Positions 4,720 to 45,554 of a stretch of DNA of 45,554 bases are shown piece after piece. Each line of letters starts with the position of its first letter. The first letter of the stretch is position 1. The notes under the pieces are model-generated. The model did not search any database, was not told the DNA's origin, and saw only the letters and a program-made list of their open reading frames with translations. Source of the stretch: Octopus sinensis (Eukaryota); the NCBI RefSeq assembly GCF_006345805.1, contig NW_021834704.1:1-45554 (forward strand), written 5' to 3'. Both the position numbers and the translations under genes were made by a program.

Positions 4720-5919
4720 GGTGAACAAATTCACTCCAAAGCTACATGGTTTCAGTGACTTCCATGAGGCAGTGTGCCGAGTGACATCACTGTGTCTACT
4801 TCACATGTTGTCAAATTTGCGTTGCTTTGATCATGTCTATGCTATGGTCAGCGATTTTGTCATGGACAGGGACAAAGAGCCAACAGGAAATTTGGGAAGT
4901 CTGCTGCAGAGACATTGAGCATGCTTACGGTGATGAAGCAAATGGGTCATACACATGGTATGAGCACTTCAAAAGCAGAAAAACTTCCTAGAAGGCGATA
5001 ATTTATCTTCTAGAAGACTGCCATGGTGTCACCCCCTGAAATGTGGAGAAAGTTCATCATCTTGTGCCTGAGGATCGTTGGAGTACAATCATGACATTGT
5101 GATGTTGATGGTCAGTCATGTGTGTCCGAGCAGGCAATCCTAATGTCCGGATTCTTCATGACAACAATGCACCCTGTCACTGAGCTCGCTTCACGCATGA
5201 GCTTCTCACCAAAAGCAACATGCTATCACTTACACACTCACCCTATTTGCAACATTTAGCACAAGTGGACTTCCATCTCTTTCTTTCCCTAGAGGAAAAT
5301 ACAGCTCAAAGATTGCTGTTTTAACACTGCTATTAAGATGAAGGTCCTTGACTCACTTATGGTCCTTGGCTCACTTTTGGTCCTTCACTCACTTATGGTC
5401 TTTGGCTCACTTTTGGTCCTTGGCTCACTTATGGTCCTTGACTCACTTATGGTCTTTGGCTCACTTATGATCCTTGGCTCACTTATGGTCCTTGACTCAC
5501 TTATGGTCCTTGACTCACTTATGGTCCTTGACTCACTTATGGTCCTTGGCTCACTTATGGTCCTTGACTCACTTATGGTCCTTGACTCACTTATGGTCCT
5601 TGACTCACTTATGGTCCTTGGCTCACTTTTGGTCCTTGACTCACTTATGATCCTTGGCTCACTTATGGTCCTTGACTCACTTATGATCCTTGGCTCACTT
5701 TGGTCTTGGACTCACTTTTGGTCCTTGACTCACTTATGGGTCCTTGGCTCACTTATACCAAATGACTTCGAGACCAGATTCCAACATGGCACCAAAGCTG
5801 GGGACCTGGTATTCTGCATTACGTGACTATTTCAAAGGAGATGATGTTAAATATTTGGTAGATAAATCATTTTTTATTAAACATAACTAGTCTGAGAACT
5901 TCTTTGATACTACCTTGTA
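4720..5919 (+). mobile_element. Degenerate mariner (Tc1/mariner) DNA transposon with an internal deletion
   Basis: Decayed HTH region (~4860-5110) and a catalytic remnant resembling HDNAP..H...PYSPDLAP.DF.LF (~5155-5290). The C-terminal 'gactatttcaaaggagat' (DYFKGD) is followed by a TIR-like end '...ctttgatactaccttg' and TA at 5918-5919. The 5' boundary is approximate. Confidence 0.8.
5343..5756 (+). repeat. 18-bp minisatellite (GGTCCTTGACTCACTTAT) x ~23 inside the mariner transposase remnant
   Basis: Direct reading. 23 hexapeptide units are countable in ORF 5338-5826. Confidence 0.95.
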
Positions 5920-11740: not shown

Positions 11741-12334
11741 GCACCTCTTCATCACTTTCTTTGCCAGAAACTCTAACAGCAGGTCGTCTTAGTTCTATGA
11801 TCCAATGTGTTTCATATTAAGAGCGTCTGATATTTTCCGTTTGTTTATTTTTCATAAAGTTCTTCAAATCTATGTTGATGTAAGAGGCAATGACTTGAAA
11901 TTTACACAAAGAATGCAAGACTTAATGAAGATTATAATAAAAACCGTTTGTCACTGTTGGCATTTACTATTCTTTGAGAATAGCATCTATAACCACTGAC
12001 TACTTTTTTTAAGCTTCTCTGAACAGTAAAATTACTTTGACTCTCCTACATTGATATAATTCTCCTCAAATAATCTGTGGTTGTTTGATCTTGATCTCTG
12101 GCACTGTGGGTTCCTATTTTTCTCCTTAAATCTTTGTCTTTTTTTTTCATTAAATCTCTTGCCCATAAATTTAGAACCCAGTCACCTAAAACCTGATTTT
12201 TGAAGTGATATATTTTCTGCTAAAATAGCTGCCCTCACCTTTTTTTTCTTCCTTTTAATATTAGGCTCAGTAGCCTGCATTATTCTTATCAGTTCTGGCA
12301 TTTGATCCTAGATACTTCAATAATGATTTACCAT

Positions 12335-25054: not shown

Positions 25055-25630
25055 GAGGACAAACACACATATATATACATATATACGATGGGCCTCTTTC
25101 AGTTTCCATCTACCAAATCCACTCACAAGGCTTTGGCCGGCCCGAGGCTATAGTAGATGACACTTGCCCAAGGTGCCACGCAGTGGGACTGAACCCAGAA
25201 CCATGTGGTTGGTAAGCAAGCTACTTACCACACAGCCACTCCTACACCTATATATATATATATATATATATACATATATACGATGGGCTTCTTTCAGTTT
25301 CCATCTACCAAATCCACTCACAAGGCATTGGTCGGCCCGAGGCTATAGTAGATGACACTTGCGCAAGGTACCACGCAGTGGGACTGAACCCAGAACCATG
25401 TGGTTGGTAAGCAAGCTACTTACCACACAGCCACTCCTACACCTATATATATATATATACATATATACGATGGGCTTCTTTCAGTTTCCATCTACCAAAT
25501 CCACTCACAAGGCTTTGGTCGGCCTGAGGCTATAGTAGATGACACTTGCCCAAGGTTCCATGCAATGGGACTGAATCCAGAACCATGTGGTTGGTAAGCA
25601 AGCTACTTACCACACAGCCACTCCTACACC

Positions 25631-25662
<32 letters not shown>

Positions 25663-26020
25663 TACGATGGGCTTCTTTCAGTTTCCATCTACCAAATCCA
25701 CTCACAAGGCTTTGGTCGGCCCAAGGCTATAGTAGATGACACTTGCCCAAGGTGCCATGCAGTGGGACTGAACCCAGAACCATGTGGTTGGTAAGCAAGC
25801 TACTTACCACACAGCCATTCCTACACCTATATATATATATATATATATATATATACGATGGGCTTCTTTCAGTTTCCATCTACCAAATCCACTCACAAGG
25901 CTTTGGTCGGCCCAAGGCTATAGTAGATGACACTTGCCCAAGGTGCCATGCAGTGGGACTGAACCCAGAACCATGTGGTTGGTAAGCAAGCTGCTTACCA
26001 CACAGCCACTCCTGCGCCTA
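25055..26020 (-). repeat. Head-to-tail array of five tRNA-SINE 5' halves (~167 bp each) separated by (TA)n
   Basis: Units at ~25084-25250, 25279-25446, 25466-25632, 25662-25828 and 25854-26020, each 'tacgatggg...ccactcct(a/g)c(a/g)ccta'. Confidence 0.95.
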
Positions 26021-26173
26021 TAAATAGGGAAAACAAAGCAAAAATAATTATCATCTCAAAGAGGAAGTCATCTGGAAATAATAATAAAAAATATATAATC
26101 TACGAGAAATAACTTAACTTTTAGATCTACTCTTTATCACCATCAGTCTCTCTCTACTTGTTACCACGCTTTT

Positions 26174-27421: not shown

Positions 27422-27870
27422 CTACCCTTTTCCTTTCTCCCCTGTTTGAATATGTTTGTGTCTTTTGAAGTCAGTACTTTGAGAGAATGATTTACCACGG
27501 ACATCACAGTGGTACGCTTTCTCTCCTGTATGAATATGTTTGTGTGTAGATAAGGCAGCACGTTGAGAGAATGATTTACCACAGATATCACAATGAAATG
27601 GTTTCTCACCAGTATGAATATTTCTGTGTCTTGGTAATTGACTACTGTCAAATGATTTACCACAGATATCACAATGATATGGCCTCTCTCCAGTATGAAT
27701 ATATTTGTGTGTAGATAAGTGAACACCGCTAGAGAATGATTTACCACAGATATCACAATGATACGGTTTCTCTCCTGTATGAATATGTTTGTGCATCATT
27801 GGGTTACTTTTTCGAAAAAAAGATTTGTACAGATACCTCAGTAATATGAACTCATCTCTTTTATGAGGTG
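27422..27870 (-). pseudogene. C2H2 zinc-finger array, cephalopod type; four recognisable fingers plus a broken first finger; probably pseudogenised
   Basis: ORF 27422-27799: HKHIHTGEKPYHCDICGKSF repeats. Finger 2 lacks one codon and the last finger has C>R and H>Q. The upstream finger has TGT>TGA and a 1-nt deletion. A putative last-exon acceptor 'tttctctataatttcag' has its AG at 28257-28258. Confidence 0.85.
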
Positions 27871-29789
27871 TTAAGGGAAAAATCTATTCTATAATTTTTT
27901 TCTCTCTCTTTTCTCTTACTTTTCCTCTCAAATCCCAGTCAATATATTTTCCTTGCTTTCGTTTTTATACTTTGTTCCTTACATACACTTCTGCTGCTGT
28001 ATTTCTGCCCAGTGTGACCTTTGTTTAGTAACCCTTTCATAAATTTATCAAACTTTAATCATGACACAGTCTTATCTTCTTGACATTCCAGTCAATAATG
28101 TTCAGAAATTTGGCTAAATATATTATTTCAGAGCAAATGTTTCACAGGAATTCTTCTACAGATTTGTAAAAACAATGTTATACATGTTTTGTATATTTTC
28201 GTTTAGTCTTTAAAACATGGTAGACATTGATGATGCTTCTTCTGTCATCTGATGTTCTGAAATTATAGAGAAACAGCAGTGTAAAATGTGGAGGCTACTT
28301 AAAAAATACAGATTCAATTCTATGGAGATAAACTGTAGAAACAAACATTTACCTTAACAACTGAGCTGGATGCCAACAGCTCCATAAAGAAATGCCAATC
28401 TCTCAAAGTAGATGGGAGTGGGACACCCAAGTAGATATGGGAGAGTTTCAGGTGATATGATAAAGACAAAGGTGCCTGGCACCCAGCTGTACCCAAGAAG
28501 ACCTGTACTCCACAGCAGAAATATTCAGACTCATCCGTCTGGTGGTAAAAAACACTTGTGACCTTTCTTCATAAAAGCAGATGTGCAGTGCCATGTTAAA
28601 GTGGCACCACATTAAAGCAACTCTGTGGTGGCACATAAAATTGCCTGTGCAGTGCCACATAAAAGCAACCTGTGAACTGTGAGGTGGTTGGCACGAGGAA
28701 GGGCATTTAGCTCTCGGAACCATAAAAATTCACACTGGAGTGTGCTGCAGCTCCCCAGCTTGCCAGCCCTGCTCAAACCATCGAATCGCTTCCAGTATAG
28801 AGGTCGAAAGATGACGATGAACTTCATTTATTAAAATTTACATCATAGAATCTTGTGTGAAGCTTCTATATTTCTCAACTCCACTGACACCTTCACATTG
28901 TGTAAGGGTTTTAAAATAAAACTACAGAATGGTGGACGCTAACATTAGTCTTTCTCCAGAAATATAACTTTTTGTTTAGATCCAGGTCAGTTCTGACTGA
29001 ACAGACATGTGATTATAGACATTCCATCCATGAACATCCTGTCTATTTCTCTAACATTCTATATATATAATCATGTCATCCAATACAATCTTCAATATTT
29101 GTAACCCATAGGAGAAATTGAAGAGAAATGAGCTGTTATTTCTAGTAGGTCATGTTGTCACATGGAGAACTGCCGGAACTAAAATTTTTGTGACAGATGA
29201 AGCAAGATTAAACATTGATGAATTATGAAAAGCCAAGAAAATTAGGAAAAAAAATTTTGAACAACTTTGATTTCCAACCATGTGATTTCAAGTTCAGTCT
29301 CACAGAGCAGCACCTTGAGCAAGGGTCTTCTTTAATAGCAGCATCTAAAGCTATCTGAGTGGATTTGATAGACAGAAACTCAAAGAAGGTAGTCCTCTGT
29401 GTTTTTGTGTCTTCATATCACTTAACACATGTCAATGCACATCAACCTGAAAATATGTGCAGACATGGGGAAATATTACCTTGCTTGGAAACTAGTGAGG
29501 GTTCACAAGAAGAAGGCCACCAGGCAGAAAAATCTCTGTCTGACCCACAAAAGAATGGAAAAATGGATTTTCTTAGCAGGTACTTGTTTTGCACATCATA
29601 ATCATCATCTTCACCATCGGTTTATTGTGAAAACTTTTATGCTTCCATGAGTGAAATTCTTTTTCTGTACTATACACTTAAAAGGGTGGGGTAAAAAAAA
29701 CTCTTTTTCAACATACACAAAAAAGGCCATGAAATTGCTGAAAATTGCTGAAGTATATTTCCATCAATTATTTTCTGTTTGTGTCAGAT

Positions 29790-30920
29790 AAATTATTCTT
29801 TCGGCCCTGCTCGATCTGTAGAAAAGGCATAGGTAGAAACTCTATAAGATGCACAAAGTGTAAGCTATGGACATATAAGAGGTGCAGCAATGTCAAAGGA
29901 AGGCTGCTAAGTAGGAAGATAGTTTTAGTATGTGGCAGATGCTCAGGAGCAATAAACACTGAAAATGCTCTGAGACCAACTTCTGCCACATTCCAGGGAG
30001 AAAAACTAGAAATAGTTGATAGCTTCTGTTACCTAGGTGACCAAGTCAGTAGCGGGGGCGGGTGTGTTGAAAGTGTAACTGCTAGAGTAAGAATAGCCTG
30101 GGCAAAGTTCAGAGAGCTCTTACCTCTGCTGGTGACAAAAGGCCTCTCGCTCAGAATAAAAGGCAGACTGTATGATGCATGTGTACAAACAGCCATGCTA
30201 CATGGCAGTGAAACATGGGCCATGACTGCTGAGGATATGCGTAAGCTCGCAAGAAGCCAGTATGCTCCGATGGATGTGTAATGTCAGTGTTCATACTCGA
30301 CATAGTGTAAGTACCTTGAGAGAACAGCTGGACCTAAGAAGCATCAGATGTGGTGTGCAAGAGAGACGTTTGCGCTGGTATGGTCATGTGACGAGAATGG
30401 ATGAAGATAGTTGTGTGAAAAAGTGCCACACCCTAGCAGTTGAGGGAACCTGTGTAAGAGGTAGACCCAGGAAAACCTGGGACAAGGTGGTGAAGCACGA
30501 CCTTCGAACTTTAGGTCTCACCGAGGAAATGACTAGAGACCGAGACCCCTGGAAGTATGCTGTACGTGAGAAGACCCGGCAGGACAAGTGAGACCATAAC
30601 CCGTGGCCTCTACATGGGATGTAGCCAGTCCACTTATGCATATCTTTCCTTCTTGGGACACAAACCCTACTTGTGAAGGCCTGTTGAGTCAAGTGAAAAT
30701 CAAAATCAAAATCGAAATTGATCAACATCAATGGAAATTGTAGCTGTGATACCAGTGCCGATGGCATCTAAGAGAACCATCCGAACGTGACCGTTGCCAG
30801 CGCCGCCCCGACTGGCCTCGTGCCGGTGGCACATAAAATGCACCATCCGATTGTGGTCGTTGCCAGCCTCGTCTGGCCCCCGTGCCGGTGGACGTAAAAA
30901 GCACCATCCGATCATGGCCG
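29790..30920 (+). mobile_element. RTE LINE, 5'-truncated, with a PHD-like finger in ORF2 and a module-bearing 3' UTR
   Basis: CSICRKGIGRNSIRCTKCKLWTYKRC...CGRC, then VDSFCYLG, MLHGSETW, RLRWYGHV and RGRPRKTW; stop at 30589-30591; the UTR modules follow. Confidence 0.9.
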
Positions 30921-31425
30921 ATTACTGTATGCTCCCCCTTTATTGCTTTCTCTCTCCCCCTCCCTCCGCTCTCCCACCTCATTATATATTACTGTATGCT
31001 CCCCCTTTCTTGCTTTCTCTCTCCCCCTCCCTCCGCTCTCCCACCTCATTATATATTACTGTATGCTCCCCCTTTCTTGCTTTCTCTCCTATTCCCTCCG
31101 CTCTCCCACCTCATTATATATTACTGTATGCTCCCCCTTTCTTGCTTTCTCTCTCCCCCTCCCTCCGCTCTCCCACCTCATTATATATACTGTATGCTCC
31201 CCCTTCTTGCTTTCTCTCTCCCATTCCCTCCGCTCTCTCCACCTCATTATATATTACTGTATGCTCCCCCTTTCTTGCTTTCTCTCTCCCCCTCCCTCCG
31301 CTCTCCCACCTCATTATATATTACTGTATGCTCCCCCTTTCTTGCTTTCTCTCTCCCCCTCCCTCCGCTCTCTCACCTCATTATATATTACTGTATGCTC
31401 CCCCTTTCTTGCTTTCTCTCTCCCA
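30921..31425. repeat. 67-bp minisatellite x ~7.5
   Basis: Unit 'attactgtatgctcccc...cccacctcattatat' starts at 30921, 30988, 31055 and onward. Confidence 0.95.
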
Positions 31426-34800: not shown

Positions 34801-35206
34801 AAACATCAATGTATGTATACCAGACATTTTGTTCTAAGCTATAAATGAAGGGAGATAACTATTAATTTGGCAGAGGATATTAAAACTGTCTAAATAACAA
34901 TGAAAGTGTTTAGGGAAGTGATTATATATACAACAACAGCAACAACAACAAACGGATATTTCAAAGTTTATCTTTATTTCAAAAGCTAATTTCTAACAAA
35001 GGAACCAAACCAGTGAAGGGTATCTCTTATGTGAGAGATAGATCTGCTAGAATTAGTAGCTAAATCCACTGCACTCCACACCTCATCATTGTAAAGGAGG
35101 ACAAATTGGAGAATGTGGTTCTTGGTTCTCTATACTTTGGTCAAAGGTCTCTCTCTTTGGTCAGCATTCACCTGGGAGTAAACAACAGTAGAATTTACAC
35201 AGAAAT

Positions 35207-35412
35207 TCACCGTTCATATAATGAGAGATACTCAAGGGCAGCAAAGCACTCAGCATCTTTAAGGCCTCTTCTGAGGGTCTCAACTGTACGTTCCTCTGGT
35301 TTACAATTTATAAACCACTCACAAAGCATTTGATAACTCTGTTTTACTGTGTCATGAGGAAAATCGTTCTTGATAATATCCTGGTCAATTGCTGGAACTC
35401 CTAGAAAAATAC
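35207..35412 (-). CDS. Death-domain protein, terminal coding exon (helices ~3-6)
   Basis: Acceptor 'gttgtatcttttgcag' (AG at 35413-35414). The phase-1 exon encodes (G)IFLGVPAIDQDIIKNDFPHDTVKQSYQMLCEWFINCKPEERTVETLRRGLKDAECFAALEYLSLYER*, with the death-domain pattern LG...I...FP.....Q...ML..W......T...L...L. Confidence 0.8.
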
Positions 35413-36169
35413 CTGCAAAAGATACAACGACAGAAAATAACAGCAACAACAACATTAACAATAATACAAAGACTATGTACTGTAAGTTATAAATATAACA
35501 AAGAATCTACATCAATAGAGAAATAACGAAATAAATAAGAAACACGAAAACTATAAGACATTGTTCTCTATTTTTAAGAATGTTGACAAAAATAACAAAG
35601 AGGTTAAAATAAAGAAGTAAGAAGAAGAAATATTAAAAAGAATGAAGGATTTGAGAAAATGTATGGTAAACAGCTGACAGGAGCAGTATTTGTGTGGAAA
35701 ATATGCTTTTTTAAGGAAGGCTTTGAAAAACCATCTGATAACATCAACGCTGGAAATAATGATGTGTGATACCCCTTCCTCGTCTGGAATATCAACATTT
35801 AGACATATCTGGAAAGTGGGGACTGAGTTGACAAACATTACCTGTAATATTCGGTACACGGTGACCAATTAAATAAAAAATAGACAAGATACCAGAATGA
35901 TCACAATGACACAAAAAATATAATATTTCTTAGTTCTCCTCAAATATTATAGAAGACACGAAATTAATTTTCTTGGTTAATGACTCATAATAAGGATTTC
36001 TTTCACTGGATCAAGGCCACAATGGAGAGAGATGTCGACAATGGAGTAAACCTAGCAATGAATAGAGTTTTAATTAACAGGAAAGAAGTGGGTAAGTAGG
36101 AATTCTATAAGCCAAGGTGATGCAGTGGGACCAGAGGTATGTTCACAGGGTAGAGGAAATACTTTGTCA

Positions 36170-36620
36170 TTAGCAGATATACGGGGGTCGCTATAGTAAG
36201 AACAACTATGGAAGTTGTAGTTGATGGTTTCTGTTACCTTGGTAACATAATTAAAAGTGGAGGAAACTATTTTGCATTCATACTATTTAGAGCAAAAGAT
36301 GAGGTGAAAATGCACAGTTAGCTATTATGGCTGTTGGTAACAAAGAGGTTCCGTTTCCAAATGAAGGGCAGATTGTATGATGCAATGATGCATTGAATAT
36401 GGAGGATGTATGAAAACTGGCAAGAAATTAAGAGAGCATTCTTTACTGGATGTGTAATGCTAATGTGTAGAAATCACAGAGAAAAAAATGAACTGGAAGA
36501 AAAACTAGGTGGTGCAGATATGGGAGGCGTACGGAAGATACAAGCTGGATAAAGAAGTACCAGGAAATCCAGATGGAAGTAAACAAGAAGTTAAAGCTGT
36601 CAAAGGACGACAACAGCTGT
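36170..36620 (+). mobile_element. Highly decayed RTE fragment
   Basis: 'gaagttgtagttgatggtttctgttaccttgg' and 'aagggcagattgtatgatgc' match the 30.0-30.2 kb RTE. Confidence 0.6.
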
Positions 36621-37767
36621 GAGATAAGTAGTCTAACTCATTCAAACTTCGAGAAATGAAACAAGATGAGGATGATGATGATGATGATGATGAACCGTTG
36701 TTTGTGGATTGATTTTAGCCCAGTATATGACTGTTAGATTTTATATTAATTCCAAAGGTATAACATGTTCGACATGTCATAGATGATATCCTCTCTTAAT
36801 TTAGATAAACCATTTCTATCAGCTGACTGACAGGATATTGTCATGACTTCTTGTATCTAGGCTGGAAGGTTCAAATCTAGTCCCCGGCACTGCTCTATAT
36901 CCCTGCTAAAGGCGTCTCTCTATGATGCAGTCTACCTAGATGCATATAGGTACCATGGGAAGGCATTTGTGTAAATAATGGGAACATTGTATAAATGGTA
37001 TTTTATGTTGTTACACATTCAGACAAGGGGAAGTGGGTTATTGTGATGTTCATGCCTTTCCAAATGACTTTTGTAATGTAATGAAGAGTGAAGTGATTTC
37101 AAGTGAGAAACAAAATCAATTCGAATTTACATATGATGGCATAATTATTTTATAATTAGGAAGTGCTTCATTAACTTATAAGTACTGAGTTCAATCCAGC
37201 AATGAAGACAATCAACAATGTGATTTGTCTGTTTCGAGACAAGACAATAGGTTGACCTGGCGCTAAAGAATTACTATAAATATAGGAAAACAGACTGGCG
37301 AAAGGGCAGACTACAACATGTCACATAAAATGCACACTCTCCTGTTTAAAAAGTTCCATTTGGTAATTTGGTCCTTGTCTCCCAGGTGAAGCAGTTATGT
37401 CACACCTGGAACACCTTTCTTCATAATATTGCCAGATTAAGTCTACACAACAACAACAACAATCTATCATTAAATTAAGTAGAAACGTAAACAACGTAAA
37501 CAACAGAAGCGTCGCTATTAACTCACCTGTTTACCTTTAAATAACAAAAGAACTTCGTTCCTTGTATCAACTCTATTGTATTTTCTAATTTCACCAAGTA
37601 TGCAAAACTATGCTAATTTCGGTGAATATTTTATGAAGTTTCAGTAATATCTTTAGCTAACATTTCAACAGGAAATTACGAATGGAACTTTTTCTTTGTC
37701 ATTTTAACAAACAAAACTTCAAGTAATGGCAACATTTATAGAAAGCAAATAGGTATTCTATACTCAC

Positions 37768-37839
37768 CTGCTTGCTGCCAGTTGCTCCCTAACTTCTCTG
37801 CTGCTCTTTTGAGATACTTCCCATTCAGGTTTCGAGACT
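37768..37839 (-). CDS. Death-domain protein, 72-nt phase-1/1 exon (helices ~1-2); module A
   Basis: Acceptor 'ggaaatacttatttcag', donor 'gtgagt'. Encodes (E)SRNLNGKYLKRAAEKLGSNWQQA(G) and joins in frame to 35412, giving the canonical ...KLGSNWQQAGIFLG... stretch. Confidence 0.8.
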
Positions 37840-37986
37840 CTGAAATAAGTATTTCCAAATTTTACACTTCACAGTAAAATCTCTTTGTCTCTGTTAATTG
37901 GTCTTTATTTTATTAGTGTATTTTATATTGTAAGACATTCCTATTATCAATGGTCAATATTTAGATCCACAACTAAATAGACTCAC

Positions 37987-38006
37987 CTTCCCTAAACTTC
38001 TTGTAT
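37987..38006 (-). CDS. Candidate mini-exon (20 nt, or 33 nt if it starts at 38019) upstream of the death-domain exon
   Basis: Donor GAAG|gtgagt and acceptor 'ttttaatag'. It reads YKKFRE in frame with the next exon. The start is ambiguous. Confidence 0.4.
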
Positions 38007-38479
38007 CTATTAAAATATCCTACATTATCAATTAACTTAGCAGTTATCTGATTTAATTATTACTCGACGAACTAGTTTACTTCTGTACCACAATTCTCTA
38101 AGTCGTACGTAAAGCTTATAACAGAATCCTGTACAAATACTTGTACACCTTCTATGGTATACTATCGCCTTCTGGGGCACCCATTGCTCTTGCCTTCTTC
38201 ACACAGCTATCTGATTGGTGTTGGTTGAAATCACTTTGCTGAAATTTGATTCGTAGTTTCATTCGATATTTCAAACCCTCCTTGAGCTGGAACTGCTGGC
38301 CTTGCTGTGGGTCACTGTAGGGATCCTGTATATACCTGTCCAGTTCATCCTCAGTACATTTTACACTACTTCACATAGCATCTGCATTTAGATTCCTATT
38401 AACATCATAAGGGTTCTGAAGGAGTTTTTCTCTAATCCAACCTCATTTCCTGTTTCAGTTGTTGCGGTCAGAGCGGATG

Positions 38480-38790
38480 GTCTCTTTTTCAACTCTGCTC
38501 CAGACATAATAATCCATGGGATTACAATCAAGGCAATTAGGAGGCTAAACGTGGGTCCATGGAAGCCGTATAAATTCTCCGACAGTCACTTCTGATTCTT
38601 CCTGCAGGTATGGAAAGGAACTGCATTCTGCTGTCATGTATAAGGCCTTCGAACAGCGACCGGGTCCAGCCAGATTTGACCACCGTCTCTAGGAGCATTA
38701 ACAGCCATCTGAATTGAACTTAAGGCTGCGTTCAAAGACGTCAGCTTCAATGGAGACACATCTGAAGACATGCTGGTCACTGCTTCGTAG
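38480..38790 (-). mobile_element. maT/DD37D transposase fragment
   Basis: Decayed VF.CVS.E...F...L..NSDG...LLETVVK.WLD.VA..RPY and PN.LDCNPMDYYVWSRVEKET. Confidence 0.75.
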
Positions 38791-41700
38791 ACTCCGTTGC
38801 AGCTTTACAATGTTTACAGAGTATTGAACAGCAGCCATGATGTTGACATTTTGATACATGGTATTTGTGCATCATAATACAGGTAAATCTTTCCCAGTCT
38901 TCAGTGATCTTCCAATCCTGTATGTCAGCTAACTTTTCCTCAATTACATTTTTCATCTTTATAATGTACATCGATATTGATTGTTCACCAATGCATACTG
39001 TTATCTCTGATAAAAGGTGACATAAACAGTTGTCAAATTTAGTGAGAACATATTGTAACTTTGCTATGCGTAAGAAATGTTATTCTCCTCTCATGTCTAG
39101 AAATTACTAACCAAAATCCTTCTCATCTTCCAGTATTCCAATGTTAATCAACATGATCATTATATGATCTACTCACAAACAACTGACACATCTTTTCAAG
39201 TAAGATAAGCATTTGCCTGCCGACTTTCTTAACTGTTGCTGTTGGTACTTGTTCATAAAACCGCCCTTATCTACAGTTCACCAGAGTGTCGTCTGATTCA
39301 GGAAACGTTTGAAGACATTTCAATGTCGCTCATTCCCCTTAAAGACGTAATTCTCAACAGATGAAATGGAACGGAAAATTATTACAGGTGTCCTAAAATA
39401 CTTTATATTTTCACAAACCCTCATTAAATACATATCAATTGTCATTCACACATTATTACAGGGAAAATAGCTGAAATGGTAATTTATCCATATTCCCAAC
39501 TATGCCAAACTTGGTGATTATTTTCCGAAATTTCAGTAGTATTCCTACCATCATCCATTATCCATTCTGGCGTGGGTTGAATGGCCAGGAACTAGCCAGG
39601 CCAGGTGTTGCACCAAGTTCTATAGTCTCTTTTCTGTTGGTTTCTATGGCTGGAGACCCTTCCTTACACCAACCACTTTACACAATATGCTGCATCCTTT
39701 TTTCGTTTCACCAGCACTAGTGCATTTTTACCAGCACCAGTGCAGCACCCATTCTAATCCTTTTTATGTGGTACCTTAATTTTAGGATCTCAATTCAGTT
39801 AGGGTGGGCACGTCTTTTCGAGTACAGTAATGCGCTCCATATTTCATCTCTGTCATTTGTTTCGTAAGGCTCAGTGTTTTGAGATGGGCCTTCAACATTT
39901 CGTCCAATGCCTTCCTGGGTCTCCTTCTCCCACATCATCCCTATTCTCTTTCTCAAACATTGATGCTGTTAATCTTGAATTTCAACTTCTTGCATCTCAG
40001 TTAACCAGAATGTCAGCTGATTCAGGAAATATTTGAAGACATCTGAAAGTCATTCATATTCCTTAATGAAGCAGATATCTTTCCAGGTGAGCGAGGATTA
40101 GTTCTACACAGGTCGAACAGCTAAATAATAATAACAGTGTGTCTTAAAACACTATACATTTGTATCAAATATCATTAACTACATGCAACTGGTGAGAAAC
40201 ATGTTACTCTAAGGAATATATCTTAAATGGTATGTAAAATGTGATTCTCAAGAATATTTAAGCGAGACGGAGATACAGATCAAACTGGAAGCGACAAATC
40301 TGATATTTGTCCAGACACTTTGGTGTATCTACTGCTTATAATTCTTACATCTGTGACAAGGTATGTATCAATTCCTCGTTTCCTACCAGACAGCAAGCTA
40401 GCACACCATCGTCCTAATCTTTATATAGGATTGTCTTTAACATTTGGTCTCGTTTCTCCAGTTATTTTTGAAATTTACTTGCTTCTGCTTAAATATGACA
40501 AATGACAGACTGCATTACGTATTTACTTTAACCTTCATTATTCACCAAGTAATTAGTTGATCCAGAACTATTTGCATATCTTGGGTCTCTTGTTAGTATT
40601 GTGATGTCATCCATGGAGTCTCTTTAGATGAATCCACTTGAGCCGTTTCTTATGATCAACCTGCTGATCATAAAATCTCCATCATAAGCAGAAAACAAAT
40701 GCTGTACAAACTACAGCAATTCCAATCTCAAGAAGGTGCCAGTCTGTTGTGAAGTTTTCTTTCATGAAGCACATTTTGAAATTGTTATAGCAACACCTCA
40801 TCACATGCTTAATCTTTTCGCATATATAAAAGAAGTCTATTGCTTCCATCAATAATTTTCGTGGTCTAAGTTTTGTGTTTCACTTTCTCAAGGAGCTGCT
40901 TTTGTGGCACTCGAGTCTTGTAAAATTTCTTTATTTGTATTGATAATCCTTTCAACAATGCGCAATGAGAAACCACTATGGCTTCGGTTAACATTTTCAT
41001 ATTTTCTACAGATTTCCTATGTAATAGCTCAATATTATGTCCGCAACAAAATGGACCAACCTTCCTAAATCTCCTCTTTCTATTAAGATGCTCTACATGA
41101 TCTAACAATGTGGTAATTATCACATTTAATTATCACTTGACAACCCTGCTTTTCTCTTCTGTTTTTCCTTTCTACATTTGGGCCAAATCTAAGACACGGC
41201 ATTTTCCTCTCACTTTCATATTTCACCAACCAATGTTATTTTTTCACCCTGAGCCATTTTCAGGAGCCTCTAAATGTTATATTATGCCTTGAGCATTATC
41301 AGTATGCTTACCATGGACAGATCAATCCTGAAAGCGAAAAAACGCACCACACGTTTTCTTGTATTACATCATGGCCCAATGGGGGTCCTTTGAATATTGA
41401 TTTAAAAAAAAAATTCCGCCCATGAAAATGTTCCTATTTGAAAGGCCAATAACGTGAATATGGAGGAAGATAATAGAGGAATTCTGATAGCAGATTCTGG
41501 CCGATCTGATTGCAGATTACACGCTGTAGCCAATTTCAGACAAATATGAATAGTTTTAAAAGCGTTCAGCACCAAAATCGTATAAATTGACATTCTTGCT
41601 CCACAAGGGGTGTGGCCCTCAAAGTTCGGTAGGGCATATCAATGGTTGAACACTAAAATTATACATGTGTTCCTTATGCATATAGAGGTATTACCAAAAC

Positions 41701-42139
41701 CCATCTGAGCCAAATCTGAGTTGGTCAAGTGAAAAGTTTCTTCCTTTTAAATTTTGTTTGAATTCATACGGAATACTCCTAATGTAAAAATATTGGCTGC
41801 GAGAAATGGAAACAATATATTTATTGACAATTGTGTCTACAAGATGGTTCTACTTGAAAGCAAAATATGTTTTTAAGCAAGCTTTACACAATGGAATTAC
41901 ACATTTCATTTTTGGAAGAATTTCACATGATTTTAATTTTGTCTATACAGCAGAGGAAGTGTCTAGGGAGATGATGGGACTTACAACAACAACATCAACA
42001 AATGAAATTTCAAAGTGTATCGTTATTTCCGCAGTTAATCTCTAACAACAAGGGAGACAAACTAGAAAGGGATTTCCGTAGTAGAGAGATCTGCTAGAAT
42101 TAGTAGCCAAAACCTACTCAGTTCACAACTTATCACCTT

Positions 42140-43045
42140 AAAGAAGGACTTTAGTTGCCAGCAGAGGCGGCATCTCTGAACTTTACCCAGCTATTCTTAC
42201 TCTAGTCGCTACACGCTCAGAGCAACCATCCCAACTACAGACTTGGTTACCTAGGTAGCAGAAGCTATTAACTATTAGTTTCTTCCCCTGACATGTGATG
42301 GAATCTGTTTTCTGTACATCTACAGTGTTTATTGCCCCAGAGCACCTGCCACTTACAAAATCTATTTTCATGGTTAACCTTCCTTTGATATAGCTGCACT
42401 TATTATGCGTCCATAGCTTACACCGGGTACATCGTGTGGAGTTTCTACCCTCTCCATTTCTACAGATAGAGCAGGGCCATCTACTTGAAAGGGGTTGTGA
42501 TTTTCAACCTTTCTACTTACCAGGCCTTTGGTTTTGGCTATGTTAAACCTAAGGCCATTCGATTCTAGACCTTGCTTCCACACCCCAAACTTTGTCTCCA
42601 GTTCTGGCATTGACTCAACTATTAGACCAAGGTCATCAGCACAGAGGAGCTCCCAGGGGCAGCCTGTCTTGGAATTTCCCTGTTATTGCCTGGAGGACTA
42701 TAAGGAATAAGAGCGGGCTGAGGACTGATCGTTGGTGAACCCTGATGTGTATTTGTAAAATGGAATGTTTCACAGAGTATAGAGGGTGTATGAAAACTGT
42801 TAAAAAATGAAGTGAGCATACTTCAGAAGAAGTGTAATATTAATGTGCTGAAGTCCCGGAGCAGAGATGAGCTGGAAGCAAAACTAGGGTTTAGAAGATT
42901 CAGAGATAGCGCACAGGAGACGAGATGGTACAGATATGGGAGGAGTATGGGGGATTTAAAAAATGTGGATAAAGAAGTGCCAGAAGATCCAAATTGAAGG
43001 AAATAAGAAGTTGAACCTGACAAAGGATGACAACAGCTGTGGGAG
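42140..43045. mobile_element. Decayed RTE (PHD type) with its 5' part inverted relative to its 3' part
   Basis: 42160-42744 on the minus strand gives the HQG.....P.LF, ADDL, KTK, PHD and FCYLG segments. 42745-43045 on the plus strand gives the continuation toward the C-terminus. Confidence 0.65.
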
Positions 43046-43059
43046 TAGTCAAATTTGAA

Positions 43060-43435
43060 TGCAACAATCAAGTCAGAACTAAAACCAGAGGTGAAACACT
43101 CAGAAAACTGTGCCTCTTTTAGCATTAATATCATCTAAAATCTAACAAGAGTGAGAAAAAGAATGACTATATGGATGGTAAATGTTGTTCAAACAATGTA
43201 ATAAGTGTATATTATATATAGTTACAAACAAGGATTTGTGAGATCAAGTCACACAGGGAACTCATATTTAATTTCTATCTTTATATTTTATGTCAACACC
43301 AATATTTTGTTTAAATGTAAACAGATGTTCACAGTTCAATACTAAATTTAATATTTAATCAACGTTAATGATCATTATACTTATACTCTTAGAGATTTGA
43401 TTTTTTAATCCTTTTAATTTATAACAATGTTATTC
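43060..43435 (+). repeat. ~370-bp direct repeat, copy 1 (copy 2 at ~45005-45368); near-identical by eye
   Basis: 'gaggtgaaacactcagaaaactgtgcc...ataacaatgttattc' occurs at both loci, ~1.94 kb apart. Confidence 0.95.
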
Positions 43436-43705
43436 AGTGGTTTGTTGCAAGTTCCACCTGGCTGGTTCCCTGTGCCGGGGGAAAGTAAAAAGCACCATCC
43501 GAACGGTGTCAATGCCAGCCCCAACCTCAACTGGCTCCTGTGTCGGTGGCACGTAAAGAGCACCCACCACACTCTCGGAGTGGTTGGCATTAGGAATGGC
43601 ATACATATGTGGAAACCTTGCCAGATCACATTGGAGCCTGGCGTAGCCTACTGCCTCTCCAGTGAAATCGTCCGACCCATGCTACTATAAAAACGGACGT
43701 TAAAC

Positions 43706-43749
<44 letters not shown>

Positions 43750-44000
43750 GTTCCATGACCAAATGACAATATTAACTCTATTGTGTCTTCTAATTTGAAC
43801 ATTATTACCAACAGCATTAACCTCAATGGGTATTTCATAAACTCACAGTAAATCGATATCTTTAATACAATTATTATACAGATAATCGTTCAATTGGAAA
43901 ATAGGAATGGAAGCTGTTTTCATTTATTCTTTCGAGCACAATATACTCGGGGAAAGAAAACCTTACAGAAATCAATTGGGAACTATTATTTTATACTCAC

Positions 44001-44078
44001 CATTTGCCTGAGATGCAGCCCCTAATTCCTGACATATAGCCTCTGTTTGTACACACCTGTCCTCAAACTTTGGAGCCT
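44001..44078 (-). CDS. 78-nt phase-1/1 exon paralogous to the death-domain N-half exon; module B
   Basis: Acceptor 'ggaaatatttatttcag', donor 'gtgagt', open frame (E)APKFEDRCVQTEAICQELGAASQAN(G). Codon-alignable with 37768-37839, and the flanking introns are homologous. Confidence 0.6.
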
Positions 44079-44295
44079 CTGAAATAAATATTTCCAAGTT
44101 TTACATTTAAAAAGAAACTTTCTTTATCTTTATTTTTATTAAACTCTATCTTGTTATTGTGAGACATTCAATTCCTGTCGTTACTGGTCAACTGTTGACC
44201 ATTATGGTTTTGGTCAATATTTCTGTACTTTCTAAAGTGGTCCCATGTAATAGCCCAATATGTCCACAATAAAACAGACTAACATCTCTAAATCC

Positions 44296-44296
<1 letters not shown>

Positions 44297-44340
<44 letters not shown>
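44297..44340. repeat. (CT)n microsatellite
   Basis: Direct reading. Confidence 0.95.
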
Positions 44341-45554
44341 AAAAACACATTAAATATTCTAACAATGTACCAATTATCTCATTTAATTAACACTTGATGA
44401 CAGTTTTCTCTTAGCTTTGTCTTTCTTTTCTTATAACTGTGCCAAATCTATGGCATGGCACAGTCCTCTCATCTCTAGAATTCACTAATCAACATTCCTC
44501 TCTAATTAAGTGAAACTGAGCCCATAAAGACATGTCCTTTATGTGTATACCCTCCACTCTGCACACAATCTGTCCCCTAAAAAACATCTCCACAAGCCAA
44601 ATTCCATACACCCTTCCCCAACATGATCCCTAACAAGATATAAAATGTAAGGTGAGGGTACACGATGTTCCTATGGCAAAATAAGTTTACATTTCATACA
44701 TACAAATGTAAGAGAGTTAATGAATTATAGCTTATTAATTATCATGATAATTGGGTATATATGTGATACAATGGCACTGTGCTTGACGGTGCAATGCTAG
44801 ATATCAATATAGATTTTATATAATCTGAGTAAAGAACATATAACCTTCATTACTATGAATATGATTGTGTCTCAGCACAGCTAATATTATGGTAGTTCCA
44901 TGAGCAAACGAAGAAATATATAACCAAGTCCACTGCCAAATACTAATGATTAATTCATTTCCTGGTCAAATAACAATGACTATCTTTCATTAAATAATTT
45001 GAACGCAACAATCAAGACCAAAGGGTGAAACACTCAGAAAACTGTGCCTCTTTTAGCATTAATATCATCTAAAATCTAACAAGAGTGAGAAAAAGAATGA
45101 CTATATGGATGGTAAATGTTGTTCAAACAATGTAATAAGTGTATATTATATATAGTTACAAACAGGGATTTGTGAGATCAAGTCACACAGTGAACTCATA
45201 TTTTATTCCTATCTTTATATTTTATGTCAACACCAATATTTTGTTTAAATGTAAACAGATGTTCACCGTTCAATACTAAATTTAATATTTAATCAACGTT
45301 AATGATCATTATACTTATAATCTTAGAGATTTGATTTTTAATTTCTTTAATTTATAACAATGTTATTCTGACCTGAGACATTCAGGGTACGTACCTAAAC
45401 AACATATCCTGACAGACATCTGGCTACATAACAACAACAACAACAATAAACTATCAGAAAACTTAGGAAAGACCTTAGTAGCAAAAGAAACAAAAACTTT
45501 CTTTTTAACTCACCTGTTTACAAATAAACAACAAAATGTTTTAGTTCTCTGTCA

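What the first reader, a model, noticed from the sequence alone, without database searches (positions are those of the whole stretch)
35207..45554. Split death domain fed by a tandem array of divergent N-half exon cassettes
Seen: the death domain is split between a 72-nt phase-1/1 exon (37768-37839, ESRNLNGKYLKRAAEKLGSNWQQAG) and a single C-half exon (35207-35412). The N-half exon lies in a module repeated at 43.1-44.4 kb and again from 45.0 kb to beyond the window. Intron homology: the acceptor 'ttggaaata(c/t)ttatttcag'; 'aactctattg...tctaattt' at ~37570 and ~43775; 'gaatggaa' at ~37680 and ~43905; 'ctaca..caacaacaacaat..ctatca' at ~37445 and ~45425. The module-B exon (44001-44078) keeps both splice sites, its phase and an open frame, but almost every residue differs (EAPKFEDRCVQTEAICQELGAASQANG; only E, LG, Q and G are shared) and the conserved Trp is lost. 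I saw no second C-half exon between the modules. Inference: this is either a Dscam-like set of mutually exclusive cassettes spliced to one C-half, giving death domains with variable helix 1-2 surfaces, or a growing spacer built from recycled death-domain exons. Coding sequence diverging while introns stay alignable would fit diversifying selection in an immune or apoptosis adaptor.
Basis: partly seen in the sequence, partly recalled or inferred. Interest (0 to 1): 0.72.

Follow-up and report, generated by a model that had tools for sequence, protein, structure and literature searches.

The report
Death-domain gene with repeated linker exons
This is the tail end of an octopus ankyrin–RING–death-domain gene in which copies of the first death-domain exon have multiplied in tandem and now appear to serve as optional linker pieces placed in series before an intact death domain, not as Dscam-style alternative halves of that domain.

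Summary
On the minus strand a canonical death domain (DD) is split between a 72-nt phase-1/1 exon (37839-37768) and a terminal exon (35412-35207). A 78-nt phase-1/1 exon (44078-44001) sits in a repeated module with the same splice-site flanks. The window has no second C-half.

The preferred interpretation, mutually exclusive N-half cassettes, is not supported. An Octopus sinensis contig collinear with most of the region carries a RefSeq model that splices four such 78-nt exons in series, then the N-half, then the C-half. Two paralogous O. sinensis genes have 8 and 12 annotated isoforms that use subsets of these exons. All 20 keep the true N-half.

The 78-nt exon adds nothing to the Pfam Death match. 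In an AlphaFold model the first three repeats have low confidence; the last is a moderate-confidence helix. The exon is still a diverged copy of the N-half exon: its intron flanks are 68-81% identical and its protein similarity to family N-halves has z=6.

Diversifying selection is not shown. The DD exons differ 3.6-fold more than introns between genomes, but four of the eight C-half differences are shared with paralogs, which points to gene conversion. No transcript reads were available.

The parts
35207..35412 (-). Coding part of the terminal exon: death-domain C-half, roughly helices 2/3 to 6, 68 codons plus stop TGA at 35209-35207. It completes the split Gly codon begun by exon A.
   Evidence: 94% amino-acid identity to the C-half of XP_036371385.1.
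37768..37839 (-). Death-domain N-half exon: 72 nt, phase 1/1, peptide (E)SRNLNGKYLKRAAEKLGSNWQQA(G). It carries the LG..W motif of helices 1-2.
   Evidence: The counterpart in L004 is at 11904-11975.
44001..44078 (-). Linker ('spacer') cassette exon: 78 nt, phase 1/1, peptide APKFEDRCVQTEAICQELGAASQAN. It is a diverged duplicate of the N-half exon and corresponds to the last of four such exons in the O. sinensis model.
43440..45012 (-). Last complete unit of the young tandem array. In order: Y element, 5' intron flank, spacer exon, 3' intron flank, SINE-like repeat. It is 90.6-91.5% identical to the other units of L004 and 90.6-94.4% identical to units of L006.
45013..45554 (-). Tail of the preceding array unit, cut by the window end. 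Its Y element spans the boundary with the unit below (44996-45368). It holds X (45434-45536), which is homologous to 37447-37549 in the intron after exon A.
   Evidence: 45553-43440 matches L006 34428-36525 at 93%.
43052..43435 (-). Y' element: the start of a further, truncated array unit, 94% identical to 44996-45368.
43442..43729 (.). SINE-like dispersed repeat with a (ATC)n-type head. Copies lie elsewhere in the window (15.1-15.4, 20.2-20.3, 22.5-22.9 and 30.8-30.9 kb) and in all the octopus loci fetched.
42145..43053 (-). Retroelement-like fragment in the intron. By eye it has a degenerate '..CADDL..' motif and a '..FCYLG..' block. Related copies lie at 29803-30145 (inverted) and 36373-36636. 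Pfam did not confirm a reverse transcriptase.
40972..41233 (-). Decayed module M: a homologue of the cassette 5' flank (72-74% to 44198-44492 and 37954-38068). Its acceptor tract and exon are no longer recognisable.
37840..38068 (-). Intron flank 5' of exon A that is homologous to the 5' flanks of exon B and module M.
37447..37767 (-). Intron flank 3' of exon A that is homologous to the intron after exon B (43760-44000) and to X at 45434-45536.
38881..40315 (.). A 1.4-kb intron segment that is absent from the otherwise collinear O. sinensis contig but partly present in the O. vulgaris paralog L006.

Best explanation
The region is the 3' end, on the minus strand, of one member of an octopus-expanded gene family. 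RefSeq labels this family 'E3 ubiquitin-protein ligase MIB1/MIB2-like'. Its members have ankyrin repeats, a C3HC4 RING finger, a repetitive linker and a C-terminal death domain.

The death domain is encoded by two exons. The first is a 72-nt phase-1/1 exon for helices 1-2 (37839-37768). The second is the terminal exon (35412-35207).

The first DD exon, together with several hundred bases of intron on each side, has been duplicated in tandem more than once. The upstream copies kept their splice sites and phase but lost the DD signature. They became 17-26-residue acidic 'xPKxEDxxVQT...' linker exons.

One 26-residue type was then amplified as a young array of units with 2.1-2.6 kb spacing. The units are about 91% identical to one another. 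There are at least 4 in O. sinensis and 5 in an O. vulgaris relative. The window holds the last full unit, with its exon at 44078-44001, and the tail of the one before.

Every one of these exons is symmetrical (phase 1/1), so any number can be included without breaking the frame. Annotated isoforms indicate that they are optional cassettes placed in series between the RING exon and the intact N-half exon. The result is a tether of variable length in front of a constant six-helix DD. In the model the first three repeats have low confidence and the last is a moderate-confidence helix.

Shown here:
- the exon anatomy;
- homology of the cassette exon to the N-half exon;
- the array structure and its differences between loci;
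- serial use in annotated gene models;
- the DD fold.

Inferred:
- that this locus splices the same way;
- that its upstream exons encode ANK and RING;
- that linker length has a function.
For: - **Anatomy:** splice sites and phases of exons A, B and C, and of four O. sinensis spacer exons, share the acceptor context 'ttggaaata[tc]ttatttcag' and the donor 'gtgagtata[ag]aa'.
- **Collinear contig:** L004 (O. sinensis VCDQ01005718.1) matches window 45012-40315 and 38881-30921 at 96.7-97.8%. Its RefSeq product XP_036371385.1 reads 4 spacers + N-half + C-half.
- **Isoforms:** the O. sinensis gene on a 46,635-bp contig has isoforms X1-X8, which cover all seven non-empty subsets of its three spacers. 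The gene on a 57,131-bp contig has X1-X12, which are subsets of a,a,b,c and include the empty one. The N-half is present in all 20. Separately deposited O. vulgaris models also string 2-3 spacers before an N-half (P0051, P0052, P0054, P0074).
- **Origin:** modules A and B align from about -330 to +270 around the exon at 68-81% in the intron. Exon B scores z=6.0 against 12 family N-halves. Its best match is ETPKLEERCLQDVAKLLGANWQQVG, score 51 against 5.3+-5.4 for shuffles, 0 of 3000 reaching it. 17-residue spacers and the N-half in L006 share the same acceptor context; all but one of them, whose donor has mutated to 'tt', also share the donor.
- **DD character:** B+C gains nothing on Pfam Death, 21.5 bits against 34.3 for A+C. 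In the AF2 model of XP_036371385.1 the DD has pLDDT 85-94, spacers 1-80 have 27-37 and the last spacer is a helix at about 70. The DD superposes on the FADD, ankyrin-G, RIPK1 and RAIDD DDs with TM 0.75-0.84.
- **Family architecture:** Ank + zf-C3HC4_3 + Death.
- **No second C-half** in the window.
Against: - No RNA reads could be examined. Serial use rests on computational gene models, and exhaustive isoform sets can be extrapolated from junctions that are hard to place among near-identical repeats.
- The only model for this locus's counterpart is partial, because its contig starts inside the array. ANK and RING exons upstream of this gene are inferred from relatives.
- The genome search and the fetch from genomes were shut, so the window could not be extended.
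- Upstream of 45012 the window follows the unit type of L006, not that of L004. Array structure here is therefore not identical to the annotated contig.
- Young spacer copies show no sign of purifying selection: exons differ by 4.7% and flanks by 3.5%. Function of the peptide is not demonstrated.
Confidence: 0.8

Rival explanations
1. Dscam-like mutually exclusive splicing. Exactly one of the homologous phase-1/1 exons (B-type copies or exon A) is joined to the single C-half, giving death domains with alternative helix 1-2 surfaces.
For: - The exons are tandem, homologous, in the same phase and of similar length (72 vs 78 nt), and there is only one C-half.
- Isoforms X6, X7 and X8 of one paralog each contain a different single spacer, so choice among spacers does occur in the models.
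Against: - All 20 isoforms examined, plus XP_036371385.1, keep the true N-half downstream of whichever spacers are used. Many contain 2-4 spacers at once.
- Exon B lacks the conserved Trp and gives no Death-profile match.
- Only AT-rich 17-34-nt inverted matches of 71-88% were found, with nothing like one docking site paired to a selector in each unit.
- The fully conserved, strong splice sites on every copy favour inclusion by default.
Confidence: 0.04
2. The B-type copies at this locus are intronic pseudo-exons, relics of segmental duplication that are rarely or never spliced in. The gene models that include them are prediction artefacts.
For: - Among young copies the exons diverge at least as fast as their flanks, 4.7% vs 3.5%.
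- One module in the window (M) and one 17-residue cassette in L006 (donor tt) have visibly decayed.
- O. vulgaris models P0064 and P0065 end by reading into the intron after a spacer. This shows that annotation in these arrays is unreliable.
Against: - Every young copy keeps an intact acceptor, donor and open frame.
- The annotations of two species' assemblies include them in series.
- The same peptide type sits between RING and DD in many paralogs whose DDs are only about 50-60% identical.
Confidence: 0.1
3. Plain tandem gene duplication: each module is the remnant of a separate two-exon DD gene with its own C-half.
For: 34864-35102, just 3' of the C-half, resembles 41919-42149 at 72%. This could be read as a second gene end.
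Against: - There is no C-half-like coding sequence anywhere else in the window; the best other hit has E=0.5.
- The 41919-42149 match adjoins a dispersed retroelement-like repeat that also occurs at 29803-30145, so it is more simply a repeat.
- The collinear contig also has a single C-half.
Confidence: 0.02

Closest known systems
Tandem exon duplication that lengthens a repetitive or linker region with symmetrical cassette exons. General principle: Kondrashov & Koonin 2001 and Letunic et al. 2002, cited from my own knowledge. Titin PEVK and nebulin-type arrays are textbook examples, also from my own knowledge.
   Same: - Exon and flanking intron are duplicated head to tail.
- All copies are in the same phase, so any number keeps the frame.
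- Copy number differs between related loci.
- Annotated isoforms differ in how many copies they include.
   Different: - The founder exon is half of a globular six-helix domain, not an already repetitive module.
- The copies have shed the domain signature while keeping the splice-site neighbourhood almost unchanged.
Mutually exclusive exon clusters that arose by tandem exon duplication: Dscam1 exons 4/6/9, and the competing RNA structure model (PMC6071210; human survey PMC5740500; PMC8373072).
   Same: Homologous neighbouring exons of similar length and identical phase, derived by tandem duplication, next to a single constant partner exon.
   Different: - The rule 'one and only one' is not met, because models include 0 to 4 copies and always the true N-half.
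- The copies are not interchangeable versions of the same structural element.
- No docking/selector pairing was found.
Death-domain superfamily adaptors (FADD, RIPK1, RAIDD and ankyrin DDs).
   Same: The A+C product passes Pfam Death. The modelled DD of the O. sinensis counterpart superposes on these DDs at TM 0.75-0.84 and rmsd 1.6-2.9 A.
   Different: The domain company is different: ankyrin repeats + RING + repeat linker + C-terminal DD. None of the solved-structure proteins matched has this combination.
Mind bomb (MIB1/MIB2) E3 ligases, the name RefSeq gives to the paralogs.
   Same: Ankyrin repeats followed by a C-terminal zf-C3HC4_3 RING.
   Different: No MIB/HERC2 domain was detected in the paralogs scanned. 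They also carry a DD that true Mind bomb proteins lack (own knowledge). The name reflects partial similarity only.

Membership tests
Death domain (Pfam PF00531) | Profile match above the curated threshold across the whole domain | tested here: met
   A+C scores 34.3 bits against a cut-off of 22.6, profile positions 2-80 of 86. The O. sinensis counterpart scores 36.7 bits.
Death domain (Pfam PF00531) | Six-helix death fold | tested here: met
   AF2 model of XP_036371385.1, whose C-half is 94% identical to the window's (N-half 76%). DD pLDDT is 85-94, with TM 0.75-0.84 to the FADD, ankyrin-G and RIPK1 DDs. The window's own spliced product could not be submitted.
Mutually exclusive exon cluster (Dscam-like) | Tandem homologous exons of the same phase and similar length | tested here: met
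   72 vs 78 nt, phase 1/1, shared flanks.
Mutually exclusive exon cluster (Dscam-like) | One and only one exon of the cluster is included in each mRNA | tested here: not met
   Tested on annotated models only. Four in series in XP_036371385.1. Subsets of 0-4 spacers in 20 paralog isoforms, always with the N-half. Reads were not available.
Mutually exclusive exon cluster (Dscam-like) | Variants encode interchangeable versions of the same structural element | tested here: not met
   Exon B adds no Death-profile score and lacks the Trp. The spacer region has low confidence or forms a lone helix in AF2.
Mutually exclusive exon cluster (Dscam-like) | A docking site complementary to a selector in each unit (competing RNA structures) | tested here: inconclusive
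   Only weak AT-rich inverted matches were found within 35000-45554. The intron after the RING exon lies outside the window.
Tandem exon-duplication linker array | Exon and flanking intron repeated head to tail | tested here: met
   Units are about 91% identical with 2.1-2.6 kb spacing in L004. 43052-43435 matches 44996-45368 in the window.
Tandem exon-duplication linker array | Copies are used in series in the mRNA | not testable with these tools
   Supported by the RefSeq model of the collinear contig and by models of paralogs in two species. There was no access to RNA reads for this locus.
Octopus ANK-RING-DD ('MIB-like') family | Ankyrin repeats and a zf-C3HC4_3 RING upstream of the linker and DD in the same gene | not testable with these tools
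   The upstream exons lie beyond the window and genome access was shut. Relatives have them: RING at L006 30426-30566 ahead of five spacers and Pfam hits.

The most novel reading that the evidence does not exclude
In some tissues or conditions a spacer exon is spliced directly to the C-half, or the RING exon is, as in the short O. vulgaris loci. This would give proteins with an incomplete or re-capped death fold that act as decoys or alternative interaction surfaces. The array would then provide regulated variation of the domain itself and not only of tether length. My evidence excludes this as the main mode. It does not exclude it as a minor, regulated product.
Probability: 0.05. Interest if true: 0.7.

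Novelty: new member of a known kind. Interest (0 to 1): 0.35.

Why it matters
This is a clear, datable example of how half of a globular domain's coding sequence can be recycled by tandem exon duplication into a linker of adjustable length. The splice-site neighbourhood stays almost unchanged while the coding body drifts.

It lies in a gene family (ankyrin–RING–death domain) that has multiplied in octopuses. I found no paper describing that family. Death domains work by assembling into oligomers, so a tether whose length is set by copy number and by optional exon inclusion could plausibly tune how an E3 ligase is positioned on such assemblies. That idea is speculative but testable.

The locus is also a warning. 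An excess of non-synonymous differences in a multigene family can come from gene conversion, not from positive selection.

Tried and rejected
- **Extending the window upstream:** Module number in the source genome is therefore unknown.
- **Locus of P0058**, the gene with isoforms X1-X8: not on record. Its exon order is inferred from the proteins only.
- **Treating L006 as the O. vulgaris ortholog:** rejected. Its spacer units are 91-94% identical to the window's, but its DD part is only 67-70% identical.
- **Second C-half or further N-half exons in the window:** none found.
- **Docking/selector search by inverted repeats:** nothing convincing.
- **Pfam confirmation that 42145-43053 is a reverse transcriptase:** negative, with only a sub-threshold PHD-like hit. 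I therefore call it retroelement-like on the basis of motif appearance and dispersed copies only.
- **Positive selection on the DD exons:** considered because of 16 differences, 14 non-synonymous, against a 1.27% background. Not accepted, for two reasons. 14 of 16 is not different from neutral expectation (p=0.22). Four of the eight C-half differences carry states shared with paralogs.
- **Folding the chimeric B+C product:** not possible, because spliced sequences are not accepted by the structure tool.
- **Literature searches for the family:** nothing relevant.

Full report
**What is in the sequence**

- Exon A is 37839-37768. It is 72 nt, with acceptor ...ttggaaatacttatttcag|, donor |gtgagtatagaa and phase 1 at both ends.
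- The terminal coding exon starts at 35412, after ttttgcag|, and ends with TGA at 35209-35207.
- Exon B is 44078-44001. It is 78 nt, with acceptor ...ttggaaatatttatttcag|, donor |gtgagtataaaa and phase 1/1.

A+C gives a full Pfam Death match of 34.3 bits against a cut-off of 22.6, over profile positions 2-80. B+C matches only through the C-half, at 21.5 bits. That is slightly less than the C-half alone at 22.6.

tblastn with the C-half finds no second copy in the 45.5-kb window.

The large direct repeat 43052-43435 / 44996-45368 is 94-98% identical.

Self-comparison and alignment add three things.
- Modules A and B are homologous from about -330 to +270 around the exon. Intron identity is 68-81%.
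- A third module (M, 41233-40972) keeps the 5' flank at 72-74% but has lost the acceptor tract and any recognisable exon.
- Much of the remaining intron is repeat-derived. It includes a SINE-like element at 43442-43729, with copies elsewhere in the window, and a retroelement-like fragment at 42145-43053. Pfam did not confirm a reverse transcriptase in that fragment.

**Related sequences**

A search with the C-half against protein-cluster representatives returned 47 hits; all those whose source names I looked up are from octopus. The best is XP_036371385.1, 'uncharacterized protein LOC118768646, partial [Octopus sinensis]'.

Its contig (L004, 21,294 bp) is collinear with window 45012-40315 and 38881-30921 at 96.7-97.8%. 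Substitutions outside the exons amount to only 1.27%.

The RefSeq product reads APKFEDRCVQTEAICQELGAASQAI / EATKCEDRC...AI / GAPKCEDRC...AI / GAPKFEDRC...AI / ESLKLNGEYLQRAAKKLGGNWQQAG / RFLGVPAID...YER. That is four B-type exons in series, then the N-half, then the C-half.

The four exons lie at L004 283, 2365, 5005 and 7104. All are 78 nt with identical acceptor and donor contexts. The window's exon B corresponds to the fourth. The array units are about 91% identical to each other.

**How the cassettes are used**

The closest relatives are RefSeq 'MIB1/MIB2-like' proteins with ankyrin repeats, a zf-C3HC4_3 RING, a run of the same 26-residue repeat, an N-half and a C-half.

Two O. sinensis genes are informative.
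- The gene on a 46,635-bp contig has three spacers. Its isoforms X1-X8 realise all seven non-empty subsets: s1s2s3 twice, then s1s2, s1s3, s2s3, s1, s2 and s3.
- The gene on a 57,131-bp contig has spacers a, a, b, c, of 26, 26, 19 and 17 residues. Its isoforms X1-X12 range from all four to none.

In all 20 isoforms the N-half exon follows the spacers.

O. vulgaris models on the GCA_951406725.2 assembly also place two or three spacers before an N-half (P0051, P0052, P0054, P0074).

These are computational models, not reads. They agree across two species' annotations, and they are what symmetrical exons with strong, identical splice sites would be expected to do. A search for docking/selector-type complementarity within 35000-45554 found only short AT-rich matches.

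**Where the cassette came from**

The cassette and the N-half exon share a near-identical splice-site neighbourhood: 23 of 25 nt upstream and 11 of 12 nt downstream. They also share several hundred bases of alignable intron.

At protein level exon B is significantly similar to the N-halves of 12 family members.
- The mean BLOSUM62 global score is 17.9, against -3.8+-3.6 for shuffles, z=6.0.
- The best score is 51, with ETPKLEERCLQDVAKLLGANWQQVG.
- None of 3000 shuffles reached either value.

In the O. vulgaris locus L006, two 17-residue cassettes and the N-half share the same acceptor context. The N-half and one cassette also share the donor context. The other cassette's donor has mutated to 'tt'.

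The simplest history is repeated tandem duplication of the first DD exon. The upstream copies then lost DD character, and the 26-residue type was amplified recently.

The exon body has diverged more than its introns. A and B are 53% identical in a codon-guided alignment, against 68-73% in the flanks (Fisher p=0.012 to 0.0016).

**Structure**

AlphaFold2 was run on XP_036371385.1 with a 16-sequence family alignment.
- The DD (residues about 106-195) is confident, with pLDDT 85-94.
- The first three spacers score 27-37.
- The last spacer is a helix of moderate confidence, about 70.

The DD superposes on the FADD, ankyrin-G, RIPK1 and RAIDD DDs at TM 0.75-0.84. The exon A / C-half boundary falls just after the LG..W..G motif, so the N-half exon supplies helix 1 and the start of helix 2. 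A spacer>C-half product would lack them.

**Array dynamics**

The O. vulgaris locus L006 has a RING exon at 30426-30566 followed by five spacer exons, at 33416, 35867, 38553, 40573 and 42362.
- Some of its units are almost identical to O. sinensis units. L004_5005 and L006_38551 differ at 3 of 726 flank sites.
- L004's second unit has no near-identical partner among the L006 units compared. L006 also has a further spacer unit after the counterpart of the window's last one, which the window and L004 lack.
- Upstream of 45012 the window follows the L006 unit type, not the L004 type.
- L006's DD part is only 67-70% identical to the window's, while its spacer units are 91-94% identical.

The array is therefore younger than the divergence of the DD parts, or it has been exchanged among paralogs.

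Within the young array the exons differ as much as the flanks, 4.7% against 3.5%. There is no sign of purifying selection on the peptide over this short time.

**Diversifying selection?**

Between the window and L004 the coding exons carry 16 substitutions in 353 sites, or 4.5%. Non-exon sequence differs by 1.27% (binomial p=1.6e-5).
- Exon A: 6 of 72, p=3e-4.
- C-half: 8 of 203, p=0.005.
- Exon B: 2 of 78, not significant.

Fourteen of the 16 are non-synonymous, which is not different from the neutral expectation (p=0.22).

Aligning the C-half with four O. vulgaris paralog copies shows the pattern at the eight sites where window and L004 differ. At four sites (positions 53, 57, 145, 148) both states recur among the paralogs. 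Three more form an adjacent cluster unique to L004. The window's C-half differs from the paralog L005 at only 3 of 206 sites, although their upstream introns are unrelated beyond -15.

This mosaic is what ectopic gene conversion between paralogous exons produces. I therefore do not accept the excess as evidence of positive selection, though selection is not excluded.

**Verdict**

The favoured interpretation, mutually exclusive alternative N-halves, is not supported.

The fallback, a growing spacer made of recycled death-domain exons, is well supported. I refine it as follows: optional cassettes used in series form a variable-length tether between a RING finger and a constant death domain. The first three repeats of that tether have low model confidence and the last is a moderate-confidence helix. 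The gene belongs to an octopus-expanded ANK-RING-DD family.

The kind of event is well known: tandem exon duplication yielding cassette repeats (PMC6071210, PMC8373072 and PMC5740500 for the related mutually exclusive outcome). The gene models already exist in RefSeq. The new points are the origin of the cassette from a half-domain exon and the behaviour of the array.

The main weakness is that no transcript reads and no upstream sequence for this very locus could be examined.

Noticed in passing
L001 9933-11785; L002 28182-30027; L003 8256-10120; L005 13872-15743 (O. vulgaris GCA_951406725.2): At four O. vulgaris loci a RING exon is followed about 1.5 kb later by a C-half exon, with no spacer and no N-half between them. 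Gene model P0055 splices RING directly to the C-half. The RING exon of L003 has an in-frame stop and that of L001 has lost a Cys, so at least some are decaying copies. Homology to the window's intron stops 15 nt upstream of the C-half acceptor.
   Followed up: partly
window 37768-37839 and 35207-35412 vs L004: The DD exons carry 14 substitutions in 275 sites against 1.27% in 12.2 kb of surrounding non-coding sequence. Four of the eight C-half differences have states shared with paralogs, which suggests exon-limited gene conversion.
   Followed up: partly
L006 31965-44826 vs L006 50890-52436: The spacer units of this O. vulgaris paralog are 91-94% identical to the window's, but its DD module is only about 69% identical. 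The array appears to be younger than the genes it sits in, or exchanged among them.
   Followed up: partly
window 27422-27883 (-): An open frame of 153 residues encodes about four to five C2H2 zinc fingers (HTGEKPYHCDICGKSF...). Pfam zf-H2C2_2 gives 1e-31. At DNA level it appears as an 84-nt tandem repeat. It is probably part of a zinc-finger gene or pseudogene downstream of the DD gene.
   Followed up: partly
window 30921-31424; L004 18286-21294: A 67-bp satellite has 7.6 copies in the window. It extends for at least 3 kb to the end of the O. sinensis contig.
   Followed up: no
window 385-1583 (+): A GC-rich (53%) stretch holds open frames with a reverse-transcriptase tail (SAYADDVTV). Pfam RVT_1 gives 25 bits, below the cut-off. 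It is a retroelement fragment.
   Followed up: partly
window 25069-26026; 5343-5756; 2239-2622: Further tandem arrays: 197 bp x 5, 18 bp x 23 and (TAT)n x 130.
   Followed up: no
window 38881-40315: A 1.4-kb intron segment is missing from the otherwise collinear O. sinensis contig but is partly matched in O. vulgaris L006 (49803-50551). A deletion in O. sinensis is therefore more likely than an insertion here.
   Followed up: no
O. vulgaris P0064/P0065 (L006); O. sinensis P0073: Several deposited gene models end with GEYKIIVPN*, which is read-through into the intron after a spacer exon. The same sequence is at window 44000-43972. Several O. sinensis contigs also break inside the array. Annotation and assembly of this family are unreliable.
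   Followed up: no
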